Shown piece after piece: positions 1 through 57,232 of a stretch of DNA of 64,000 nt. Both the position numbers and the translations under genes were made by a program. The stretch lies in the IMG/VR virus record IMGVR_UViG_3300033145_003233, positions 186,001 through 250,000 of that record; one strand, 5' to 3'. The notes beneath the pieces were generated by a model. The model did not search any database and was not told the origin of the DNA. It saw nothing but the letters and a program-made list of their open reading frames with translations. Within the stretch, counting starts at the first letter, position 1, and each line of letters opens with the position of its first letter.

Positions 1-419
1 TGATTCTTATCTGAAAACCTTTCTAGATTCTCATATTGAGTAGTAAGAGTTTTAAGGTCTTCTGTGATCTGCCCTAACTCTCCATCCATTTCTTTTTTCG
101 CGGAAAGAAAAGTACTGACACTACTCATTTGTTGTTTCTCTTCAGTCCATCCTCTTACCCACCAATTAGAAGAATCTTGAGTTAAAGAACCACTACCATA
201 AGGATTATCTTTAAGTTGCTTACCATCCATAAAAGCTATCTTACCTTCTGCATAAGCCTCTGACATATTAATATTGTAGAGAATAAGCTCTTCTGTAGAA
301 GTTACTGTTTCAGATAGTTCTATTTCGGTGTTACAGTTACTACATTTTATACAACATTTACCATCTTCCCTAGACCCTATAAAAAGAGTATCATGGTAAC
401 ATTTATTACATTTTAGCAT
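1..419 (-). CDS. Partial ORF (runs off window start): Zn-ribbon plus RMF-like motif protein
   Basis: Not in ORF track. Manual translation from ATG at 419: MLKCNKCYHD...CCIKCSNCNTE...EAYAEGKIAFMDGKQLKDNPY...WWVRGWTEE, open to position 1. Confidence 0.7.
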   Translation of the reverse strand, partial: MLKCNKCYHDTLFIGSREDGKCCIKCSNCNTEIELSETVTSTEELILYNINMSEAYAEGKIAFMDGKQLKDNPYGSGSLTQDSSNWWVRGWTEEKQQMSSVSTFLSAKKEMDGELGQITEDLKTLTTQYENLERFSDKN

Positions 420-420
420 T

Positions 421-1107
421 TTATATCCCCTGCTTAATAACATCGTCACTAGTTATAATAGTACCAATAAACTTATTACTTACATATTTATTACGGTGCT
501 TGAGAAATTTAAACCGCTTATAATTTCTTATAGGAAAGGCCTTTGCGGTGTTAGAGTATGTAGATAATCTATAGAAGAAGATACCATTAGATATACCTCT
601 CTTAGATACCCTCTTCATATCTATAGCAGCACCTACCTGCATTAGTTTGTAGGCATAAGGATGTCTCTCTCCTAGCCTTTGAAAGAATATGAAATTCTCT
701 TGTATCCTACCAATGTGATCCTTACATTTTACAGCATGGTCTCTCTCTGATTTCCCCTTATATTTCTCCCAAGCATTGAAAAAACCTGGTCCCTTGGCTG
801 GGATGGCAGACATGATTGCTTCTATCTTTTTAAGAACATCAGATAAACTATGCCATTGATTGCCACCTAACAAGAATAGAGATTGTATTTGATAATAGTA
901 AATACCTTTTCTATAGGGGTTAAAAAATAACCTACCTGATTTTTTCCTAATTCTCTTATCTACTTTTCTAACATCTAATAACCAGCTTGTTCTAGTAGCT
1001 GTTTTCTCTTCCTCTGTCATGTGATATTTTCTTCTCAATACTAATTTTCCATTCTTACTGATGACTTGCTTCCCTGCTTCTTCCGGGTTGTAAATTATAT
1101 CGGACAT
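421..1107 (-). CDS. Basic hypothetical protein, possible winged-helix DNA-binding regulator (228 aa)
   Basis: Long Lys/Arg-rich ORF with RBS, directly downstream of the operator-flanked sigma70 promoter. The wHTH call is a weak impression only. Confidence 0.6.
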   Translation of the reverse strand: MSDIIYNPEEAGKQVISKNGKLVLRRKYHMTEEEKTATRTSWLLDVRKVDKRIRKKSGRLFFNPYRKGIYYYQIQSLFLLGGNQWHSLSDVLKKIEAIMSAIPAKGPGFFNAWEKYKGKSERDHAVKCKDHIGRIQENFIFFQRLGERHPYAYKLMQVGAAIDMKRVSKRGISNGIFFYRLSTYSNTAKAFPIRNYKRFKFLKHRNKYVSNKFIGTIITSDDVIKQGI

Positions 1108-1140
1108 ATTTATATTTCCTTTCTAAAGAACCTATTTTTG

Positions 1141-1180
1141 TAGTCTGGAAAGTTATTTGATAGTTTAATTTTCCAGACTA
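1141..1180. promoter_or_regulatory. Palindromic operator-like element, copy 1
   Basis: TAGTCTGGAAA-N18-TTTCCAGACTA, perfect 11-bp arms. Confidence 0.8.
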
Positions 1181-1192
1181 TCGATTTTCTAT

Positions 1193-1221
1193 ATCATACT
1201 ACTTTCTAACCAACTTGTCAA
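1193..1221 (-). promoter_or_regulatory. sigma70-type promoter for the 228-aa gene
   Basis: TTGACA-17-TATGAT on the minus strand. Confidence 0.8.
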
Positions 1222-1234
1222 GCAAAAAACAGTT

Positions 1235-1272
1235 GTCTGGAAAGTTATTCGATAGTTTAATTTTCCAGACTA
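1235..1272. promoter_or_regulatory. Palindromic operator-like element, copy 2
   Basis: GTCTGGAAA-N18-TTTCCAGAC; direct repeat of 1143-1180 with one mismatch, 92-bp period. Confidence 0.8.
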
Positions 1273-1358
1273 TTAATTTTTAGATTTAAAATCTATTTTT
1301 ATTTCAAGACAAAAAAGATCCAGTTTATCCATTTCTGTCGATAAACCATTTTTTCTTC

Positions 1359-1645
1359 CTATTCACTACTCTCTAGTTTTTTTAATCTTTCATTTAAATT
1401 TTCAACATTTTTTCTATTAGTTTGAATGTTACGATCTATTGTGTACAACAATACACCTATTACAACTATCAAAGCAATTCCATAAAATTCCAGCATTTTT
1501 CTTTCTCCTATTGATCTTTCAATTCTCTTATTTTCTTTTGTACATCTCTATGTAATTTTCTCATAAGGAAGAGATGACCACTTATAGCCAACACACATAT
1601 CCCAAAGAACACAACAACTAATATTATCTCATCCTTATTAATAAT
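1359..1645 (-). CDS. Two tiny single-TM ORFs (1359-1496 and ~1508-1645)
   Basis: Manual translation gives MLEFYGIALIVVIGVLLYTIDRN... and a 45-codon hydrophobic ORF with uncertain (ATT) start. Confidence 0.45.
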
Positions 1646-2117
1646 TAACCTCTTTGAAAGTTTCTACTTCTACTCTATCAAAACTATGATCTTGTCCTAC
1701 TATATCAAATCCCTTTGTTACTATAACTTCTGATTTTTCTTGTCCTTCTACCCCTATATCCGTAATCAACCTTTTTGGTATTAAGCATTTTATTATTTTT
1801 CTACTTGATGAAGTTAAACATAGCCATCGTGTTGCTCCCCCTCTATTCACATGTAAATGATAATAAGCTATATATGATGTCCATCCTCTTTTTGGAGTAT
1901 CGCACCATGTTATCTCTTTTTTGGAAGTATTACCTTCCCTAGGTTTTTGGAGTCTATTTTTTCTTTTATATGGTTTGCCATCATATATAGGTGGAGAGAA
2001 CTGTTTTCTTCCTCCTATAGTTGTTACCTCTACTGCTTTATAAGCAGTTATCATTTCTGGCTTATCTTTCAACCATTCTCTTTTTTGTTTTGCAGTATAT
2101 TTTCTACTAAGGCACAT
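1638..2117 (-). CDS. Hypothetical protein, paralog family A (MCL..KYT...EWLK..PEMITAYK)
   Basis: Clear similarity to the two adjacent ORFs. Confidence 0.8.
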   Translation of the reverse strand: MCLSRKYTAKQKREWLKDKPEMITAYKAVEVTTIGGRKQFSPPIYDGKPYKRKNRLQKPREGNTSKKEITWCDTPKRGWTSYIAYYHLHVNRGGATRWLCLTSSSRKIIKCLIPKRLITDIGVEGQEKSEVIVTKGFDIVGQDHSFDRVEVETFKEVNY

Positions 2118-2119
2118 CT

Positions 2120-2566
2120 TTAATTCTCCTGAAAAACTTCATCTTCTCCTACTATCTCAAATCCTTTAGCTATTATAACTTTTGAATGATAGTATCCTTC
2201 TTCTCCTATCTCTGTAATAAGATTCTTTGGTATTAAACATTTTATTATTTTTCTATATGTTGGTAAACAACATGTCCATCGTTGTGCTGCTTCTTTATCT
2301 GCATATAAGTGATAATAAGCTATATATGAAGTTTCGTCTCTTCTTGGGTTCTTGTAACGTACTGATATATTTTTATCTTTATCTTTATTAGTATGAAGTC
2401 TATTTATTCTTTTGTATGGTTCATCACAAAATATAAGTGGATAGAATTTTATTTTTCCTTCTTCAGTTCTTACTGTCATTATTACTTTATAGGCAGTTAT
2501 CATCTCTGGTTTATCTTTCAACCATTCTTCTTTTTGTTTCTTCGTATATTTTACCCTTAAGCACAT
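2120..2566 (-). CDS. Hypothetical protein, paralog family A
   Basis: Shares EWLKDKPEMITAYK, SYIAYYHLY, IIKCLIPK and IG.EG motifs. Confidence 0.8.
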   Translation of the reverse strand: MCLRVKYTKKQKEEWLKDKPEMITAYKVIMTVRTEEGKIKFYPLIFCDEPYKRINRLHTNKDKDKNISVRYKNPRRDETSYIAYYHLYADKEAAQRWTCCLPTYRKIIKCLIPKNLITEIGEEGYYHSKVIIAKGFEIVGEDEVFQEN

Positions 2567-2568
2567 CT

Positions 2569-3018
2569 TTAATTCTCCTGAAAATGCCTATCTTGTTCTA
2601 CTATGTCAAATCCTTTTGTTACTATAACCACTACATCATTTGCACCTTCTATCCCTATCTCTGTAACAAACCTCTTTGGTATTAAACATTTTATTATTGA
2701 TCTGCTCACGATAGAATGTCGTAACCATCGTTGTGCTGATTCTTTATCTACATATAAATGAAAATAAGCTATATATGAGGATCTGCTTTGGCATGTAGTA
2801 TCATAACATACGGGAGTTCTCTTATACCAATCATTCTTCTTATGTTTACGAAGTCTATTTTTTCTTTTATATGGTTTATAACCATATACGATTGGATAGA
2901 ATTTTACCTGTCCGTCTTTATTTTTCACATCTACTGCTTTATAGGCAGTTATCATTTCAGGTTGATTTTTCAACCATTCTTCTTTTCTTCTTTTCGTATA
3001 TCTTCTATTTAGGCACAT
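2569..3018 (-). CDS. Hypothetical protein, paralog family A
   Basis: Same motifs as neighbours. Confidence 0.8.
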   Translation of the reverse strand: MCLNRRYTKRRKEEWLKNQPEMITAYKAVDVKNKDGQVKFYPIVYGYKPYKRKNRLRKHKKNDWYKRTPVCYDTTCQSRSSYIAYFHLYVDKESAQRWLRHSIVSRSIIKCLIPKRFVTEIGIEGANDVVVIVTKGFDIVEQDRHFQEN

Positions 3019-31309: not shown

Positions 31310-31346
31310 AATATATGGTTAAAATTTTTTACTTGTCTGGAAAATT
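31310..31346 (-). promoter_or_regulatory. Box promoter TTTTCCAGACA-N18-TATATT
   Basis: CAGACA at 31339-31334; -10 at 31315-31310. Confidence 0.65.
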
Positions 31347-31437: not shown

Positions 31438-32013
31438 TCACTTTCCAACCAGCTCTGTCATATTTTCATATTCCCACCATACCAGCAAAGAACTTTCTTG
31501 ACATTTCTGAATGCCTCTCTTGATAGTAGTACAAGTAGTGCATTCTTTTATACCCAATATTTCTCCAGTTTCTTTAAGACTTCTTTCTTCGAAATAATAA
31601 TGAAAAATTGCTTTCAACTGTCTTTTAGTGGGTTCTTGAAGTAACAACTTCCAGAGTAATTCATTGTTCTCTAATCTTAGCAAGCCGGGATCTTCCCATG
31701 GGTTTTTCCTCTCAAGATAACTATCTTCGTGTCCATCATCAACTCCTCCACTAACGTCCACATTAGTTAAAAGCTTGGGTCTTTTTCTTCTCACTTTTTT
31801 AATGGAAATATCTCTTGTTTGGGACTTGATATAACTCAACATATCAAACTTTGCTCTATTAACTACTATGGGTGGATCAGGATGATAAAAATCCCCGCAT
31901 GTTAACCATGCTTCATTAACGAGTTCATTAGGTTCAAAACGGCCGCCCCAATTCTTCGCAATTTTATGCGCCACTCTGGTGATAGGTTCTAAAAGTTCTT
32001 CAAATCTTGCCAT
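31438..32013 (-). CDS. Sigma-70-family RNA polymerase sigma factor (regions 2 and 4)
   Basis: ELVNEAW (region 2); QLKAIFHYYFEERSLKETGEILGIKE...IKRGIQK (region 4 HTH, FliA/ECF-like). Confidence 0.8.
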   Translation of the reverse strand: MARFEELLEPITRVAHKIAKNWGGRFEPNELVNEAWLTCGDFYHPDPPIVVNRAKFDMLSYIKSQTRDISIKKVRRKRPKLLTNVDVSGGVDDGHEDSYLERKNPWEDPGLLRLENNELLWKLLLQEPTKRQLKAIFHYYFEERSLKETGEILGIKECTTCTTIKRGIQKCQESSLLVWWEYENMTELVGK

Positions 32014-35258: not shown

Positions 35259-35297
35259 ATACTACTCCATGCAAAAATTATTTGTCTGGAAAATTAA
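35259..35297 (-). promoter_or_regulatory. Box promoter TTTTCCAGACA-N18-TAGTAT
   Basis: CAGACA at 35288-35283; -10 at 35264-35259. Confidence 0.7.
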
Positions 35298-35389: not shown

Positions 35390-35428
35390 AAGCTACGTCT
35401 CAGAAAAAACATTTGTCTGGAAAATTAA
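35390..35428 (-). promoter_or_regulatory. Box promoter TTTTCCAGACA-N18-TAGCTT
   Basis: CAGACA at 35419-35414. Confidence 0.65.
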
Positions 35429-37165: not shown

Positions 37166-37200
37166 CCTATACCACTAACAAAAAACATTTGTCTGGAAAA
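37166..37200 (-). promoter_or_regulatory. Box promoter TTTTCCAGACA-N18-TATAGG
   Basis: CAGACA at 37195-37190; imperfect -10. Confidence 0.55.
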
Positions 37201-39597: not shown

Positions 39598-40812
39598 TTA
39601 CAAATCATCAGCAAATCTAGTAGCCGCAGATGATGGTAAATATCCTAGTAAAACATTTGCCTTTGGTCTGAAAGCAGTAAACATTTTCCTACGAGAAAGT
39701 GAACTAAAATCATCAAGTGCTGCATGAAACTTATTTTTCCTCATTAAGAAAATATATTTTATTGACTCATTAAACTTCCTTTTACCAAAAGGTTGAGGAC
39801 GTTGAGCTAGATAAAGTCCTAACTCTTTATCAGACATATGTTCAGTAAGGTCATACATATCCTCTACCTCAGAAACAAATGACTCCAACTTTTGAGAAAG
39901 AATCCAAACGATAGTATCGAAGTCTTTTTCTAGTTCCTCAGGAAGTTCCTTTTTCACTTCGTCCAAATCGTCACCATTCAATAATAAATCCCAGATAGCT
40001 AATGGAGTTACCTTTGAAATCAGTTTATGGATACGAACATACTCTGCACCTTTTACCTTTATACGAACACCGCTCTCAAAACGGATAACATATCCTTCTT
40101 CATTTTGAGTTAGAGTCTCAGCCTTTTCCACAATAGATGTCATGTCGTCAAAATCATGCTTAGGCACAAATGCTACTCTTAACTTCTTGCTTGCCTCTAC
40201 TTGAAGATCTTCATAAGAGTACTCTACACCTTGAGGATCAAAAATAGCCAACAACACTAACCCTGAGAAATTGTAATTTACAACTATTTTATTCTCTGGA
40301 TAAATTATCTCGAACAGATAAGTGTTCTTTTTCCAAGCTGACCGAAGGACAACATGATTGCTGATTATCCATTCCTCAGCCCACTTAGCTTGTTCAGATG
40401 TAAAAGAGCCACACGTAGCAACTCTCCATGCTCCCTCGTAGTAGAACATGATTCCAAGAGAACCATCCATTTTTTCAGTAACAGTGAATTCTGATTCTAT
40501 AATAGATGCAGAACCTGATTCTATTTCACCGAAATTAAAAAACTTCATGAAAGGAGAAGCAACTACCACCTTATTTTTAAGGTCCAGAATTAGACCTCTT
40601 GACATTAGAGTAAAGACATTCCAGTTTCTTCCAGCAACACAGTCAATAGAATACTTGAACAAAGCCAAATGTGGAAAATCTGGATGGTAATTAACATTGA
40701 TATTTCCTCTGTTAATTTCCTCGAACAGTCCATCAACAAGGGCTTGAAACTCCATTACTCTAGATGGATGTTTCTTTCCATGTTTTAATAATATTTCCAT
40801 TACGTCATTCAT
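39598..40812 (-). CDS. RNA ligase, T4 Rnl1-like
   Basis: SPFMKFFN, TEKMDGSLG (motif I), EGYVIRF (motif IV), KVKGAEY (motif V). Confidence 0.9.
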   Translation of the reverse strand: MNDVMEILLKHGKKHPSRVMEFQALVDGLFEEINRGNINVNYHPDFPHLALFKYSIDCVAGRNWNVFTLMSRGLILDLKNKVVVASPFMKFFNFGEIESGSASIIESEFTVTEKMDGSLGIMFYYEGAWRVATCGSFTSEQAKWAEEWIISNHVVLRSAWKKNTYLFEIIYPENKIVVNYNFSGLVLLAIFDPQGVEYSYEDLQVEASKKLRVAFVPKHDFDDMTSIVEKAETLTQNEEGYVIRFESGVRIKVKGAEYVRIHKLISKVTPLAIWDLLLNGDDLDEVKKELPEELEKDFDTIVWILSQKLESFVSEVEDMYDLTEHMSDKELGLYLAQRPQPFGKRKFNESIKYIFLMRKNKFHAALDDFSSLSRRKMFTAFRPKANVLLGYLPSSAATRFADDL

Positions 40813-41283: not shown

Positions 41284-41320
41284 ATACTATGGCTGAGAAA
41301 AAACATTTGTCTGGAAAATT
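41284..41320 (-). promoter_or_regulatory. Box promoter TTTTCCAGACA-N18-TAGTAT
   Basis: CAGACA at 41313-41308. Confidence 0.7.
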
Positions 41321-42068: not shown

Positions 42069-43823
42069 TTACAATTTTCCCGCAGCGAACTCAGAAAGAA
42101 TACGAGGCACATTAGAATCTAGCCCTGCTATGTCCATCATTCCTGCATCACTAGGATCAGCAATAGTGAACTTATTTGCTGCAAAAGCCATAACAACAAG
42201 TTTCGCATTCTTGTTAAACTTCTTTCTGTATCTCTTCAATGCCTCAAACGGATGCGCATATCCAGTATTTGTCTCATTATCTGTTAAAACAACAAACACA
42301 TCGACATCCATTTCGTTATCCATGGCATATTGCATAGGCAAAGAACAATCCGTACTACTAAACGGAAGATTAGAAGTCCTTCTGATAACAGTATCAAGAC
42401 TATCTTTCGCTGTGATATTCAACGGAACGAAAGTACGTGAGAAACCCATCATCGCATAATTCTTTTCCGTCCTAGCAATAGTCATAGCCACAACTGATGC
42501 TGCTTCACGAGGAACTATTCCGCTTGGATGATCAAAAGAACCCCAACCACTAGAAGCCATTGAAGCACTAACATCAATTCCTAACAAGAATTTCTTTCCT
42601 GTTGGTTCAACATAGTTGAACGCCTTATAAAAAGCCTCTTCCAAAGCATCTTTAATAGCAGACACAGGACTCCATGAAGTTCTCATACCACTACCCTTGC
42701 TATAAGTCTTAAGGGCCAACATAATCGTCATTGGATGGAGACGACTCTTCTTCAATGCTTCCTCATTTGTAATCTTACCAATAGCCAATGAAGTCTCATC
42801 ACTCAATGACTTCAAAAGTCCTGAAGAAGTCATTTGACCCAAGTTACGAATTAAAGCACCTATAGGCATCTTAGGAAGCAATGCTTTTTGTACCTTTTTT
42901 TCATTCCTGAATTGAGGAGGAATAGACTCTCTTGTTAGACCATAAGCTGTAACCAACTTCACCACTTCATTAATGTCAGTTGAGTTCATACTTTGCTCAT
43001 GTGCCCAAATATACTTCAGAGTTCCATCTTTCAATGCCTCTAGTTCAGAAACTAAAAGACCAGGACTTTCTTGAGTTTTTCCAGAAGCCTCAGAATCTTT
43101 TGCTCTCTTTACAAGAACCTCTTCGCTTGTTACTCCATGTGTCGCATAATGGAAAATAGTAGCATGCTCATCAGAAGGAGTAGTCAATGCCCTACCATTT
43201 CTAGCAGGCTTTCCATCAGCAGTAGGGCGAGAGATTCTGCACATACGAAGCAGATCCCCATGAGTCAACCTTTGCCCACCAACTGAACGACCAGGGTACT
43301 TGCAAATTTGATATGCTAATTTAACAGCATCTTTTTCAGTGTACCATCTTCCCATTGCTCTAAGCATACCCTTAGCCTTATGCCCTTCTTTCAATGAAAG
43401 AACAGCAAGCACCCACTCAAAAAGAGCAGTTGAAAAACGAGCAACCTTAGGCATCATCTTATTAGCGTATGCTCTTGTCTTGTCGTCTCCGTGAACACTG
43501 CAAACTGCCAATGCAAAAATAGCAGGAGCATTCTTAACAGCACGACCTTCATCGCTAATTTGAACGATAGTATCTACCGTACGCTTACTATCTAATTTCA
43601 GACAACGCAAAATGACATCATAGTTTTCCATAGTCAGTTCGCGAGCTGAAGCATAATAAGTGCCATTCTCATTCCCTATAATTAAGAAACGATTTAGCCT
43701 CGTCCAGTCATCAGCCGTAAACACAAAACCACCTGAACGGTTTTCGACTTGCGTACTCTTAGCTCTTTTTCTTTGGTTAGTTTGAGGGTTTGCTACAATA
43801 TTAGCATAATTTTTCTCAGCCAT
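42069..43823 (-). CDS. rsr: Ro60/Rsr TROVE-domain RNA-binding protein (TROVE plus vWA)
   Basis: GGFVF..DDW.RL.RFLIIG...GTYY; LLGIDVSASM (MIDAS); TDCSLPM; FVVLTDNET; DPSDAGMMDIAGLD. Confidence 0.95.
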   Translation of the reverse strand: MAEKNYANIVANPQTNQRKRAKSTQVENRSGGFVFTADDWTRLNRFLIIGNENGTYYASARELTMENYDVILRCLKLDSKRTVDTIVQISDEGRAVKNAPAIFALAVCSVHGDDKTRAYANKMMPKVARFSTALFEWVLAVLSLKEGHKAKGMLRAMGRWYTEKDAVKLAYQICKYPGRSVGGQRLTHGDLLRMCRISRPTADGKPARNGRALTTPSDEHATIFHYATHGVTSEEVLVKRAKDSEASGKTQESPGLLVSELEALKDGTLKYIWAHEQSMNSTDINEVVKLVTAYGLTRESIPPQFRNEKKVQKALLPKMPIGALIRNLGQMTSSGLLKSLSDETSLAIGKITNEEALKKSRLHPMTIMLALKTYSKGSGMRTSWSPVSAIKDALEEAFYKAFNYVEPTGKKFLLGIDVSASMASSGWGSFDHPSGIVPREAASVVAMTIARTEKNYAMMGFSRTFVPLNITAKDSLDTVIRRTSNLPFSSTDCSLPMQYAMDNEMDVDVFVVLTDNETNTGYAHPFEALKRYRKKFNKNAKLVVMAFAANKFTIADPSDAGMMDIAGLDSNVPRILSEFAAGKL

Positions 43824-55332: not shown

Positions 55333-56448
55333 TTATTCGTCAGAGAAGTCTACTACTTCCCCCTTCGCCTCTTTTTTATTCTTCATAAGAAGATAATCTT
55401 CATTAAGCATTTTTAGAATAGCCCTACCGCAAGACCATTCTTCTCTTTCTTTTAGAGAGCAAATAACTATACCTTCTCTAATATGGTCAGCACCATTTCT
55501 TTTAGCGAGAAAAGAAGGGCCTGTAGAAAGGCCTTTCATCAAATTCATATTAAATGACCCCTCGATAATAAGAGGAACCATAGGGACAGAAAAAGCCTTA
55601 CATAGATTATTAAATAGTTCCCAATCAACATACTTACCATCTATCTTCAATGAAAATGCCACAAAGTTAAGAGAATTAGGTTTTCCATAATGCATAGATT
55701 TATGTCCACCTCTTACTCTTCCATACACTTCTCCGTATAGAGTAGCACTTTTCTTGCAGCCATAACGAGGATCATTACCTAAAGCCGAAAGAAGATATTT
55801 AACTGACTCAAGAGTAAAGGGATACCAGTAGCTATTAGAAAGCATTTCTTCATCTGTAGGCATTTTTCTCTTAACCCTATGAGAACCACCTTTCCACTCT
55901 AGTTCTCCTTCCTCAGATTTGAAGAAGCCTATCCTACAATTAGTCCCATCTATTTTTTCTGTAACACAAACTTCCTCTCCCTTTTCAAAAATATCAGGGA
56001 AATTTCTGATATTCTCTATGTCTGTATATTTAGTAAACAGAGGGTCATCGGGAGCAGCATCTCCAGCCATAGCTCTTAGAGGTGGTTCGTATTTAGTAAT
56101 TCCATAATGTTCAGCTACATCTGTCCCTACTTCCCAATTTTCTTCGTTATTTATAATCAGTCCGTAAGACATCGCCCCACGAAGTCTGGCACACCTAACG
56201 CGATTGTGAAGTTTACCTCCGAGATAGTTACCCACTCCAAGTCTCTCTACAAGTTCGAGAGGAAGCACAGCATCAACAGGGATATAAACAACAATATCTC
56301 CTACTTTATAATCTCCCTTGCCAACTATGCACTCCCATCCCTTGACAACGGCAATTTCTAGCCTGTCAGCATTCTCGTGCGAGAGAACTTCTTTTATATC
56401 ACAAACTTCTACTATTAAACTACTGCTCATCCTTCTTCCTTTCTTCAT
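55333..56448 (-). CDS. RNA ligase, DRB0094 family
   Basis: N-terminal H.NADRLE...GW...V.KG; TEKIDGTN, REGIVI, KMLNEDYL. Confidence 0.9.
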   Translation of the reverse strand: MKKGRRMSSSLIVEVCDIKEVLSHENADRLEIAVVKGWECIVGKGDYKVGDIVVYIPVDAVLPLELVERLGVGNYLGGKLHNRVRCARLRGAMSYGLIINNEENWEVGTDVAEHYGITKYEPPLRAMAGDAAPDDPLFTKYTDIENIRNFPDIFEKGEEVCVTEKIDGTNCRIGFFKSEEGELEWKGGSHRVKRKMPTDEEMLSNSYWYPFTLESVKYLLSALGNDPRYGCKKSATLYGEVYGRVRGGHKSMHYGKPNSLNFVAFSLKIDGKYVDWELFNNLCKAFSVPMVPLIIEGSFNMNLMKGLSTGPSFLAKRNGADHIREGIVICSLKEREEWSCGRAILKMLNEDYLLMKNKKEAKGEVVDFSDE

Positions 56449-57195: not shown

Positions 57196-57232
57196 ATTCT
57201 ATTTCTACTATTTTCTACTTGTCTGGAAAATT
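57196..57232 (-). promoter_or_regulatory. Box promoter TTTTCCAGACA-N18-TAGAAT, embedded in the MTase 3' end
   Basis: CAGACA at 57225-57220; the box encodes ...INFPDK*. Confidence 0.7.

What the first reader, a model, noticed from the sequence alone, without database searches (positions are those of the whole stretch)
421..1272. The same box arranged as two palindromes bracketing a sigma70 promoter: possible autoregulated master regulator
Seen: GTCTGGAAA-N18-TTTCCAGAC occurs twice (1143-1178, 1235-1270), one copy upstream and one just downstream of TTGACA-17-TATGAT, which drives a basic 228-aa ORF. These copies have no -10 at 18 nt. Inference: a protein that binds the box activates the single-box promoters and represses or loops this promoter. 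The 228-aa product is the simplest candidate for that protein.
Basis: partly seen in the sequence, partly recalled or inferred. Interest (0 to 1): 0.65.

Follow-up and report, generated by a model that had tools for sequence, protein, structure and literature searches.

The report
Promoter-box palindromes flanking a phage promoter
Two 36-bp palindromes built from a giant phage's own 9-bp promoter box flank the host-type promoter of a conserved, basic, winged-helix-like protein gene in dozens of related uncultivated phages; this looks like a feedback switch tied to a class of about 40 phage promoters, but nobody has yet shown which protein binds the box.

Summary
GTCTGGAAA-N18-TTTCCAGAC occurs at 1143-1178 and 1235-1270 as a 39-bp direct repeat (38/39 identical). 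The two copies bracket an 11/12 sigma70-type promoter on the minus strand that drives a 228-aa protein of pI 10.2. The window lies in a 548-kb virus record. There TTTCCAGAC sits at a rigid 17 nt from a (T/G)ATAGAWT element at about 40 intergenic, gene-strand sites. In 46 of 63 related loci the homologous gene has the same two palindromes, with centres 92±1 bp apart. Their half-sites change between lineages together with that lineage's single-box promoters. All four half-sites of a locus are equally alike, which argues against an RNA hairpin and for four protein sites on DNA. The 228-aa protein belongs to an orphan family (274 clusters, no Pfam). It has a weak but consistent winged-helix-like core and one helix position that tracks deviant boxes. 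It is translationally coupled to a Zn-ribbon/RMF-like protein and is always near a DnaB-like helicase gene. The operator reading is well supported. That the 228-aa protein is the binder is plausible (about 0.5) but unproven. The main rivals are a phage ECF-type sigma factor and a replication-initiator role.

The parts
1143..1178 (.). Proximal palindrome (pal1): arms 1143-1151 and 1170-1178 with an 18-nt centre. About +9..+44 of the promoter, so it lies in the transcribed leader.
   Evidence: a palindrome at the same place in 48/63 related loci
1235..1270 (.). Distal palindrome (pal2): arms 1235-1243 and 1262-1270. About -84..-49; its gene-strand box ends 13 nt before the -35 hexamer.
   Evidence: a distal palindrome in 51/63 related loci, centre spacing 92 bp in 35/48 and 91-93 in 45/48
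1193..1221 (-). Sigma70-type promoter: TTGACA (1221..1216), 17-nt spacer, TATGAT (1198..1193), followed by a conserved ATAGAAAA discriminator.
   Evidence: 11/12. A promoter of at least 9/12 lies between the palindromes in 39/48 relatives, with a 17-nt spacer in 35/48. The rTAGAAA after the -10 is read from the sequences.
421..1107 (-). Gene A: 228 aa, pI 10.2, orphan family, winged-helix-like core (residues about 60-190). Candidate box-binding protein.
1..419 (-). Gene B (193 aa; ATG at 419; runs past the window start to genome 185838). Its start is 1 nt after gene A's stop. It has an N-terminal 4-Cys zinc ribbon, an RMF-like domain and a long helix.
1281..1295 (.). AT-rich 15-bp palindrome just upstream of pal2. 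Unique in the genome and conserved at this place in many relatives.
31335..31343 (-). Single box (gene strand), placed directly after a TTGCAA-17-TATAAT promoter.
35284..35292 (-). Single-box promoter-like site following a terminator-like hairpin.
35415..35423 (-). Single-box promoter-like site.
37191..37199 (-). Single-box promoter-like site.
41309..41317 (-). Single-box promoter-like site.
57221..57229 (-). Single-box promoter-like site with AATAGAAT 17 nt downstream and the ATG 2 nt after it.

Best explanation
The two palindromes are DNA operators. Each is a back-to-back pair of the phage's own 9-bp promoter box, so four copies bracket the host-type (sigma70-like) promoter of a conserved two-gene operon (gene A, 228 aa; gene B, 193 aa). 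A phage-encoded protein that recognises the box on double-stranded DNA occupies these four sites, at about -84..-49 and +9..+44, with centres 92 bp apart. That binding feeds back on the promoter by occlusion, roadblock or a loop. The same protein at single boxes, placed 17 nt upstream of a (T/G)ATAGAWT start-site element, marks about 40 factor-dependent promoters for small genes, tRNAs and a DnaB-like helicase. The most likely box reader is gene A's product, through its winged-helix-like core and the helix K129-D-x-I132-G-R-I-Q-E-N138. That would make the operon autoregulated. Shown: the anatomy, its conservation, the co-variation of box and palindrome, and the absence of extra hairpin-type symmetry. 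Inferred: who binds, the sign of regulation, looping, and timing (host-type promoter early, box class later).
For: (1) The box is a promoter-type element. Forty single sites share TAAT-TTTCCAGAC-AAnTG-W5T, then a rigid 17-nt distance to (T/G)ATAGAWT, then a purine in 39/40. The pattern box+N19+TA falls 35:3 on the gene strand in this genome and 18:1 in a 350-kb relative, with 0 in reversed-pattern controls. Sites follow stop codons, terminators or tRNAs and precede start codons. (2) Both palindromes occur in 46/63 related loci, against a shuffle mean of 0.07. Centre spacing is 92±1 bp. The inner CTGG..CCAG gap is always 23-24 nt, 103 of 104 cases. (3) Half-sites differ between lineages (TTCCAGAC, TTCCAGGC, AACCAGTC, ATCTAGAC, TCCCAGAG, TGCCAGAG and others), and the same variant recurs at single-box sites of the same contig. 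The locus's own 8-mer occurs at 0.236/kb against 0.021/kb for other loci's boxes, Wilcoxon p=1.2e-4, almost always on the gene strand. (4) The four half-sites of a locus are equally alike whichever way they are paired: 0.78 within a palindrome, 0.80 and 0.77 across palindromes, 0.53 between loci. This means four copies of one protein site, not a selected stem. (5) Gene A's AlphaFold model has pLDDT 86.5 and pTM 0.85. Nearly all top structural matches are winged-helix DNA-binding domains (Fur-DNA, Orc1/Cdc6 WHD-DNA, forkhead, OmpR/PhoB, H5) over residues about 60-190, with Z 4-5.3 and 73-92 residues aligned. The protein has pI 10.2. (6) Residue 132 is I/V/L/M in 35/37 lineages with (T/A)TCCAG boxes. 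It is K, K, C/R or T in 4 of 9 lineages whose box 5' half deviates (Fisher one-sided p=0.0095, not corrected for phylogeny). (7) This is the only promoter in 548 kb with four boxes.
Against: There is no binding data. The structural matches are weak (Z at or below 5.3, within the range the tool itself calls common). A general search for co-variation between protein columns and box positions was confounded by phylogeny and gave nothing decisive. The phage encodes at least 4 ECF-type sigma factors behind host-type promoters, and these could read the box instead. Gene B is co-transcribed, evolves faster (21-34% identity against 50-68% for A) and could be the specificity subunit. The A family is linked to a DnaB-like helicase gene in 7/7 informative contexts, including distant homologues that lack such palindromes. 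This points to an ancestral replication role. Half-site cores are 27-28 bp apart, about 2.6 helical turns, which is awkward for a simple symmetric dimer. In some relatives the positions after CCAG differ between arms or from the single boxes.
Confidence: 0.5

Rival explanations
1. The box is the -35-type element of a phage-encoded ECF-like sigma factor, or of another phage factor that is not gene A. The palindromes are non-productive box copies through which that machinery shuts off or competes with the host-type early promoter. On this reading gene A is only a regulated target, probably a replication protein.
For: At least 4 sigma70-family (ECF-type) genes are present, each behind a host-type promoter. 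The 17-nt distance from the box to the downstream element is the classic -35/-10 spacing. No phage RNA polymerase was found, so host core plus phage sigmas is expected. Boxes also lie just downstream of, or upstream of, six other sigma70-like promoters.
Against: From established knowledge, sigma region 4 alone does not bind DNA stably without a -10 element. Four well-kept boxes in a fixed inverted geometry without the downstream element therefore fit a stand-alone binder better. Ten single-box sites place a genuine ATG directly after the 8-mer, including a signal-peptide start. That cannot be reconciled with the 8-mer acting as a -12..-7 element. The box does not resemble ECF -35 motifs of the GGAAC type (my knowledge). 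The palindromes always sit at gene A's own promoter.
Confidence: 0.25
2. Gene A is an origin-binding replication initiator, comparable to lambda O, P22 gp18 with gp12, or iteron-plasmid Rep. The palindromes, the AT-rich palindrome and the strong promoter together form a replication origin or its operator. The initiator represses its own promoter on the inverted repeats and may double as a transcription factor at single boxes.
For: An A-family gene is followed within 1-5 genes by an AAA_25/DnaB_C ATPase that matches phrog_19 'DnaB-like replicative helicase' in 7/7 informative contexts, down to homologues at E about 1e-18. Orc1/Cdc6 winged-helix domains are among the top fold matches. RepA of pPS10 binds an inverted repeat at its own promoter as a dimer and iterons as a monomer (PMC4857107). 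A unique conserved AT-rich palindrome lies beside pal2. One distant homologue sits beside a 1.4-kb gene-free AT-rich stretch with perfect 22-nt inverted arms.
Against: There is no tandem iteron array. The about 40 single boxes are dispersed, oriented with the genes and fixed relative to start codons, which is promoter-like behaviour. There is no GC-skew inflection at the locus. No Pfam Rep, O or DnaA-type domain was found. The protein-atlas 'Rep' look-alikes score 0.84-0.86, which is chance level. The helicase gene has its own single-box promoter, so the linkage may partly reflect a conserved replication gene block.
Confidence: 0.12
3. Gene B's product (zinc ribbon plus RMF-like domain plus long helix), alone or together with A, is the box reader.
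For: Gene B is translationally coupled to A and conserved downstream in at least 33 loci. It evolves fast, as a specificity subunit might. Zinc ribbons can bind DNA or RNA polymerase.
Against: Its best local structural matches are ribosome modulation factor (probability 0.98-0.99, rmsd 1.2-2.0 Å over about 47-50 residues) and generic zinc ribbons. That points to the ribosome rather than to DNA. No DNA-binding fold was detected.
Confidence: 0.07
4. The palindromes act as RNA hairpins: a leader stabiliser for pal1 and a terminator for pal2.
For: Each folds as a 9-11-bp stem, -13.9 and -11.9 kcal/mol, z -6.8 and -4.0. pal1 is transcribed. pal2 is followed by AACTGTTTTTT.
Against: Similarity within a palindrome is no greater than between palindromes. 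The arms equal the DNA promoter box and co-vary with it. The left arm would read differently as RNA. Mismatched arms give C-U or G-A, not wobble pairs (L007, L009). The T-run after pal2 is an A-run in several relatives (L005, L046). The loops are 14-24 nt. There is no Rfam match.
Confidence: 0.04

Closest known systems
Phage T4 MotA / MotA-box middle promoters (sigma appropriation with AsiA)
   Same: In both, a phage early gene behind a host-type promoter could supply a factor that reads a 9-10-bp box occupying the -35 region of some 40-60 phage promoters, many for replication genes and tRNAs. In both, early and box promoters can stand in tandem. For T4: box consensus, 12±1 bp to the -10, monomer, about 60 promoters (PMC2988021).
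   Different: The genome has no MotA C-terminal domain or AsiA homologue. Gene A looks winged-helix-like, not double-wing. The box lies 17 nt from an element that abuts the start codon rather than 12 nt from a canonical -10. As far as I know, T4 motA is not flanked by paired box palindromes.
Iteron-plasmid Rep initiators (RepA of pPS10, RepE of F, pi of R6K)
   Same: These are winged-helix proteins of about 230-300 aa. Dimers bind an inverted repeat of the recognition sequence at their own promoter and repress it, while monomers bind single copies elsewhere (PMC4857107). They are linked to a replicative helicase function.
   Different: There is no Pfam Rep_3 match and no two-WH model match. 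The single sites are not a tandem iteron array but dispersed promoter-like sites. There are two palindromes 92 bp apart instead of one operator.
Two-operator loops around a promoter (lac O1-O3, gal OE-OI)
   Same: Two operators bracket a sigma70 promoter, one upstream and one in the early transcribed region. The centre spacing of 92 bp equals the lac O1-O3 distance (my knowledge).
   Different: Each operator here has half-sites 27-28 bp apart. No LacI/GalR-type protein is involved. Looping is only inferred from the fixed spacing.
Phage phi29 p4
   Same: A small phage regulator binds inverted repeats with a long central spacer, activates one promoter class and represses early promoters from flanking sites (my knowledge).
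   Different: The fold is unrelated (N-hook). The half-site spacing is about 21 bp. There is no genome-wide single-box promoter class.
DnaA and DnaA boxes
   Same: An asymmetric 9-bp box is used at the protein's own promoter and at many other promoters, by a protein tied to helicase loading (my knowledge).
   Different: There is no AAA+ or DnaA domain IV. No origin cluster of boxes was found.

Membership tests
T4 MotA/AsiA sigma-appropriation system | MotA-type activator (MotA_activ N-terminal domain plus MotCF 'double wing' C-terminal domain) | tested here: not met
   Pfam scan of gene A found no family at E<=1. PF09158 was searched in six frames across the whole genome with no match. Fold matches are winged-helix, not double-wing.
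T4 MotA/AsiA sigma-appropriation system | AsiA co-activator | tested here: not met
   PF09010: no match in the 548-kb genome.
T4 MotA/AsiA sigma-appropriation system | Box centred at -30, 12±1 bp upstream of a canonical sigma70 -10 | tested here: not met
   The box lies a rigid 17 nt upstream of (T/G)ATAGAWT, which directly abuts start codons or SD sequences. No canonical -10 is conserved at the T4 distance.
Winged-helix DNA-binding domain (fold class) | H1-S1-H2-H3-S2-wing-S3 topology superposable on solved wH domains | tested here: inconclusive
   VIA-align Z 4.0-5.3, rmsd 2.5-4.3 Å, 73-92 residues aligned over model residues 60-190, with about 45 inserted residues. Foldseek found nothing at E<0.7.
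Iteron-type Rep initiators | Rep_3-type sequence family or two tandem WH domains | tested here: not met
   No Pfam, NCBIfam or PDB-sequence match for the protein or for profiles A1 and A3. Only one wH-like core is seen in the model.
Iteron-type Rep initiators | Inverted repeat of the recognition sequence at the gene's own promoter | tested here: met
Iteron-type Rep initiators | Tandem direct iterons forming an origin | tested here: not met
   Single boxes are dispersed one per intergenic region. No tandem array was seen.
Sigma70-family sigma factor (for gene A) | Regions 2 and 4 (PF04542, PF04545) | tested here: not met
   Gene A has no hit. The genome's sigma matches lie in other ORFs.
Intrinsic terminator / structured leader RNA | Stem kept by compensatory change, G-U tolerated, U-tract directly after the stem | tested here: not met
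   There is no excess within-palindrome symmetry. The scan did not call these palindromes terminators. The tract after pal2 is not conserved. No Rfam match.
Ribosome modulation factor (for gene B, central domain) | RMF fold and Pfam PF04957 | tested here: inconclusive
   Pfam 23.9 bits, below the 27.9 cut-off. Foldseek local matches to RMF structures 2jrm and 9iot_y have probability 0.98-0.99 but whole-chain E about 0.3-0.9.

The most novel reading that the evidence does not exclude
Gene A founds an undescribed family of phage DNA-binding proteins (274 clusters, no known domain) that acts like a viral DnaA. One asymmetric 9-bp box would serve three roles: as paired palindromes it would autoregulate the gene, as single copies it would switch on a promoter class with leaderless-type start sites, and with the always-adjacent DnaB-like helicase it would start replication. 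Box and protein would co-evolve rapidly between huge-phage lineages, so that each lineage has a private promoter code. The co-transcribed RMF-like protein might tilt translation toward the leaderless messages.
Probability: 0.15. Interest if true: 0.85.

Novelty: new variant of a known kind. Interest (0 to 1): 0.6.

Why it matters
Half-megabase phages are known almost only from metagenomes, and how they schedule their genes is essentially unknown. This locus gives a concrete, conserved and testable regulatory module. It comprises a lineage-specific promoter box, an operator pair built from that box, and an orphan protein family that is the leading candidate reader. The box differs between relatives while the architecture stays fixed, so specificity swaps can be tested with natural variants. 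The single-box promoters also show an unexplained geometry, with a conserved element abutting the start codon. That hints at non-canonical initiation by host RNA polymerase with phage factors.

Tried and rejected
These steps led nowhere.
- Complex prediction on two copies of gene A gave no support (score 0.02). This is not evidence either way.
- No public sequencing run holding the locus was listed, so no transcript ends could be examined and read laying was not used.
- Megablast and tblastn against GenBank phages found nothing. GTDB genomes hold no relative. IMG/VR holds only one other contig.
- Foldseek against PDB and BFVD, and the atlas shape search, found nothing significant for A.
- Protein-atlas feature hits to Rep-type clusters scored 0.84-0.86, which is chance level.
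- Pfam, PHROGs, NCBIfam and PDB-sequence profile searches of A, of 10 long relatives and of 46 diverse relatives found no domain.
- The mutual-information scan between protein columns and box positions was dominated by clade structure. No residue is shared by the three TACCAG lineages.
- The search for a phage RNA polymerase found none. PF00623 and PF00562 gave no match. PF00940 also gave no match, but its control genomes did not respond either, so that result is uninformative. The only DFDGD-bearing ORF (2035 aa) is a Laminin_G/Kelch structural protein.
- Sigma genes could not be examined in the variant-box contigs because those records are not held.
- One pattern search was mis-spaced by 1 nt and found nothing. 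It was corrected.
- An origin reading from GC skew failed: there is no inflection at the locus.
- Distant homologues showed no clear box palindromes.

Full report
**What is in the sequence**

The window is bases 186001-250000 of a single 547,943-bp virus record (CheckV 100%, GC 33.6%) that is transcribed almost entirely from the minus strand. The reported 9-mers are exactly where stated. The repeated unit is really a 39-bp direct repeat, 1143-1181 and 1235-1273, 38/39 identical including the 18-nt centres, with a period of 92 bp. Between the copies, on the minus strand, lies TTGACA (1221..1216), a 17-nt spacer and TATGAT (1198..1193). This is the best sigma70-type match in the region at 11/12. 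It drives ORF 421-1107, here called gene A: 228 aa, pI 10.18. If the start site is near 1186 (my inference), pal1 covers +9..+44 and pal2 covers -84..-49.

**What the box is**

The genome holds 49 exact TTTCCAGAC copies. About 40 of them are intergenic and on the local gene strand. Aligned, they read TAAT-TTTCCAGAC-AAnTG-(T or A tract), then exactly 17 nt to (T/G)ATAGAWT, then a purine in 39/40.

- The pattern box+N19+TA occurs 35:3 (gene strand: other strand) here and 18:1 in a 350-kb relative. Reversed-pattern controls gave 0.
- The sites follow stop codons, terminator hairpins or tRNAs.
- They cluster at 155-186 kb, directly downstream, in the sense of transcription, of gene A, a 27-tRNA array and a DnaB-like helicase gene.

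So the box is part of a promoter-type cassette.

**An unexplained point: the start-site geometry**

In 10 sites the ATG of a real ORF, one of which begins with a signal peptide, starts immediately after the 8-mer. In others AAAAAGGAG follows at once. With T at the last 8-mer position and a purine next, the start site is most likely that purine. The 8-mer would then lie at about -8..-1, not at -12..-7. A canonical leaderless arrangement (-10, 8 nt, ATG) does exist at a sigma70-type promoter of this phage, so the box class is different. I found no phage RNA polymerase. The genome does carry at least 4 ECF-type sigma genes, each behind a host-type promoter.

**Conservation**

Gene A has at least 193 close relatives (43-68% identity, all about 230 aa, none annotated). 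I recovered 80 metagenomic loci and one IMG/VR locus.

- Of 63 loci with at least 197 nt upstream, 48 have a proximal palindrome, 51 a distal one and 46 both (9-nt arms, at most 1 mismatch). Shuffles gave 0.07 loci with both, maximum 1.
- Centre-to-centre spacing is 92 bp in 35/48 and 91-93 bp in 45/48.
- The inner CTGG..CCAG gap is 23 or 24 nt in 103/104 cases.
- A promoter of at least 9/12 lies between the palindromes in 39/48 loci, mostly with a 17-nt spacer.
- In this genome no other box palindrome exists, and no other sigma70-like promoter has four boxes.

**Co-variation and the DNA-versus-RNA question**

The half-site differs between lineages, and the same variant appears at single-box sites on the same contig. 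A locus's own 8-mer occurs elsewhere in that locus at 0.236/kb, against 0.021/kb for other loci's boxes (Wilcoxon p=1.2e-4), and almost always on the gene strand. Across the six variable flanking positions, identity is 0.78 between the two arms of one palindrome, 0.80 and 0.77 between arms of different palindromes, and 0.53 between loci. There is therefore no extra symmetry within a palindrome. All four arms track one lineage-specific sequence in either orientation. That is what a double-stranded-DNA-binding protein predicts and what a selected RNA stem does not. The RNA folds are stable, but that follows from the palindromy itself. Rfam has nothing.

**The candidate protein**

Gene A has no Pfam, PHROG, NCBIfam or PDB-sequence match. 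A profile search finds 274 clusters at E<=1e-3. None of the members tested carries a known domain. None is in GenBank phages or GTDB genomes.

The AlphaFold model is confident (pLDDT 86.5, pTM 0.85). Foldseek finds nothing. An exhaustive structural alignment and a second look both return almost only winged-helix DNA-binding domains, over residues about 60-190, at Z 4-5.3. This is consistent but weak.

The best-conserved segment, K129-D-x-I132-G-R-I-Q-E-N138 followed by Q143-R144-L145, heads the helix that precedes the beta-hairpin 'wing'. Residue 132 is hydrophobic in 35/37 lineages with (T/A)TCCAG boxes. It is K, K, C/R or T in four of nine lineages whose box 5' half deviates (p=0.0095, not corrected for phylogeny). 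Broader co-variation tests were uninformative.

**Context that widens the picture**

Gene A's stop is followed after 1 nt by the ATG of gene B (193 aa). Gene B is conserved downstream in at least 33 loci but at only 21-34% identity. Its model (pLDDT 89) shows an N-terminal 4-Cys zinc ribbon, a domain that locally superposes on ribosome modulation factor, and an 85-residue helix.

Next come a 158-aa gene and a 308-aa AAA_25 ATPase, each with its own single-box promoter. The ATPase matches 'DnaB-like replicative helicase'. An A-family gene is followed by such an ATPase within 1-5 genes in all seven informative contexts, including homologues at E 1e-18 to 1e-48 that lack the palindromes.

This deep linkage suggests an ancestral role beside the helicase, as an origin-binding or loading protein. 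It recalls iteron Rep proteins, which repress their own promoter on an inverted repeat as dimers and bind single sites as monomers (PMC4857107). I found no tandem iterons and no skew inflection, so I keep this as a rival or an additional function.

**Most likely mechanism**

Shown: four outward-facing copies of the promoter box bracket a host-type promoter, at fixed positions and spacing, across a broad phage clade, and they co-vary with the clade member's promoter box.

Inferred:
- A stand-alone box-binding protein occupies them. My estimate is about 0.75-0.8 that they are protein operators of the box reader.
- That protein is gene A's product, about 0.5 overall.
- Binding at -57..-49, abutting the -35, and at +9..+17 / +36..+44 lowers or gates transcription by occlusion, roadblock or a 92-bp loop.
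- The same protein at single boxes enables initiation at about 40 promoters, which is logic of the T4 MotA type (PMC2988021). It is not membership of that family: no MotA or AsiA homologue is present, and both the fold and the geometry differ.

The main rival is that a phage ECF-type sigma factor reads the box and gene A is merely regulated.

**Verdict**

This is a new variant of a known kind of regulatory circuit, carried by an uncharacterised protein family in uncultivated huge phages. It comes with one real oddity, the start-site geometry, and one open alternative, replication.

Noticed in passing
window 1281-1295: An AT-rich 15-bp palindrome (TAGATTTAAAATCTA on the plus strand) lies just upstream of pal2. 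It is the only copy in 548 kb, allowing up to 2 mismatches with both arms intact. A similar element (AATAGATTTT...) sits at the same place in many related loci. Its function is unknown; it could be a second regulator site or an unwinding element.
   Followed up: partly
window 1-419 (-), continuing to genome 185838 (L096:2241-2819:-): Gene B is translationally coupled to the 228-aa gene. It has a 4-Cys zinc ribbon, a domain that superposes locally on ribosome modulation factor (probability 0.98-0.99), and an 85-residue helix. An RMF-like protein next to a promoter class that yields leaderless-type messages is suggestive but untested.
   Followed up: partly
genome 155-168 kb (L097); also window 57221 site: At 10 single-box sites the start codon follows the (T/G)ATAGAWT element with no gap, which implies leaderless or near-leaderless mRNAs. 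At others the SD follows at once. The conserved element therefore lies at about -8..-1, which does not fit sigma70-family -10 geometry.
   Followed up: partly
window 31438-32013 (-); genome 44.6-45.5 kb, 256.5-257.7 kb: At least four sigma70-family (ECF-type) sigma factor genes are present. Those inspected sit behind host-type TTGxxA-17-TATAAT promoters, and one has a canonical leaderless arrangement.
   Followed up: partly
window 31447 and 39543 (-), and 18 further genome sites: A second recurrent promoter-like motif, TTGAAAGTGAAAG followed by TATAAT-like hexamers, occurs at 20 sites (up to 1 mismatch). All appear to lie on the local gene strand, several next to single boxes, and one lies upstream of a sigma gene.
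   Followed up: no
genome 184337-185263 (-) (L096:737-1663:-): A 308-aa AAA_25/DnaB_C-like ATPase matches phrog_19 'DnaB-like replicative helicase' and has its own single-box promoter. A homologous ATPase follows A-family genes in 7/7 informative contigs, including very distant ones.
   Followed up: yes
genome 171686-183550 (-): An array of 27 tRNA genes lies just downstream of the operon. Single boxes directly follow some tRNAs here and in the relatives L003, L013 and L032.
   Followed up: partly
window 1638-3018 (-): Three tandem paralogous genes of about 150 aa (each starting MCL..KYT..K..EWLK) lie immediately upstream of the locus. They have no family match.
   Followed up: no
window 39598-40812, 42069-43823, 55333-56448 (-): An RNA-repair-type gene set is present: two RNA ligase families (phrog_562, phrog_968) and a 584-aa protein matching phrog_850 'RNA-binding protein'. 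Nearby are DNA methyltransferases and radical-SAM genes.
   Followed up: no
genome 442265-448384 (-) (L095): A 2035-aa ORF carries VWA-like, Laminin_G_3 and Kelch beta-propeller domains and is probably a virion or fibre protein. Its DFDGD motif is not an RNA polymerase signature.
   Followed up: yes
L013/L001 9190-9222: One relative lacks the distal palindrome at gene A but carries a further box palindrome (TCTGGTA..TACCAGA) upstream of another promoter-like site about 3 kb downstream. Palindromic use of the box is therefore not strictly limited to gene A's promoter in every lineage.
   Followed up: no
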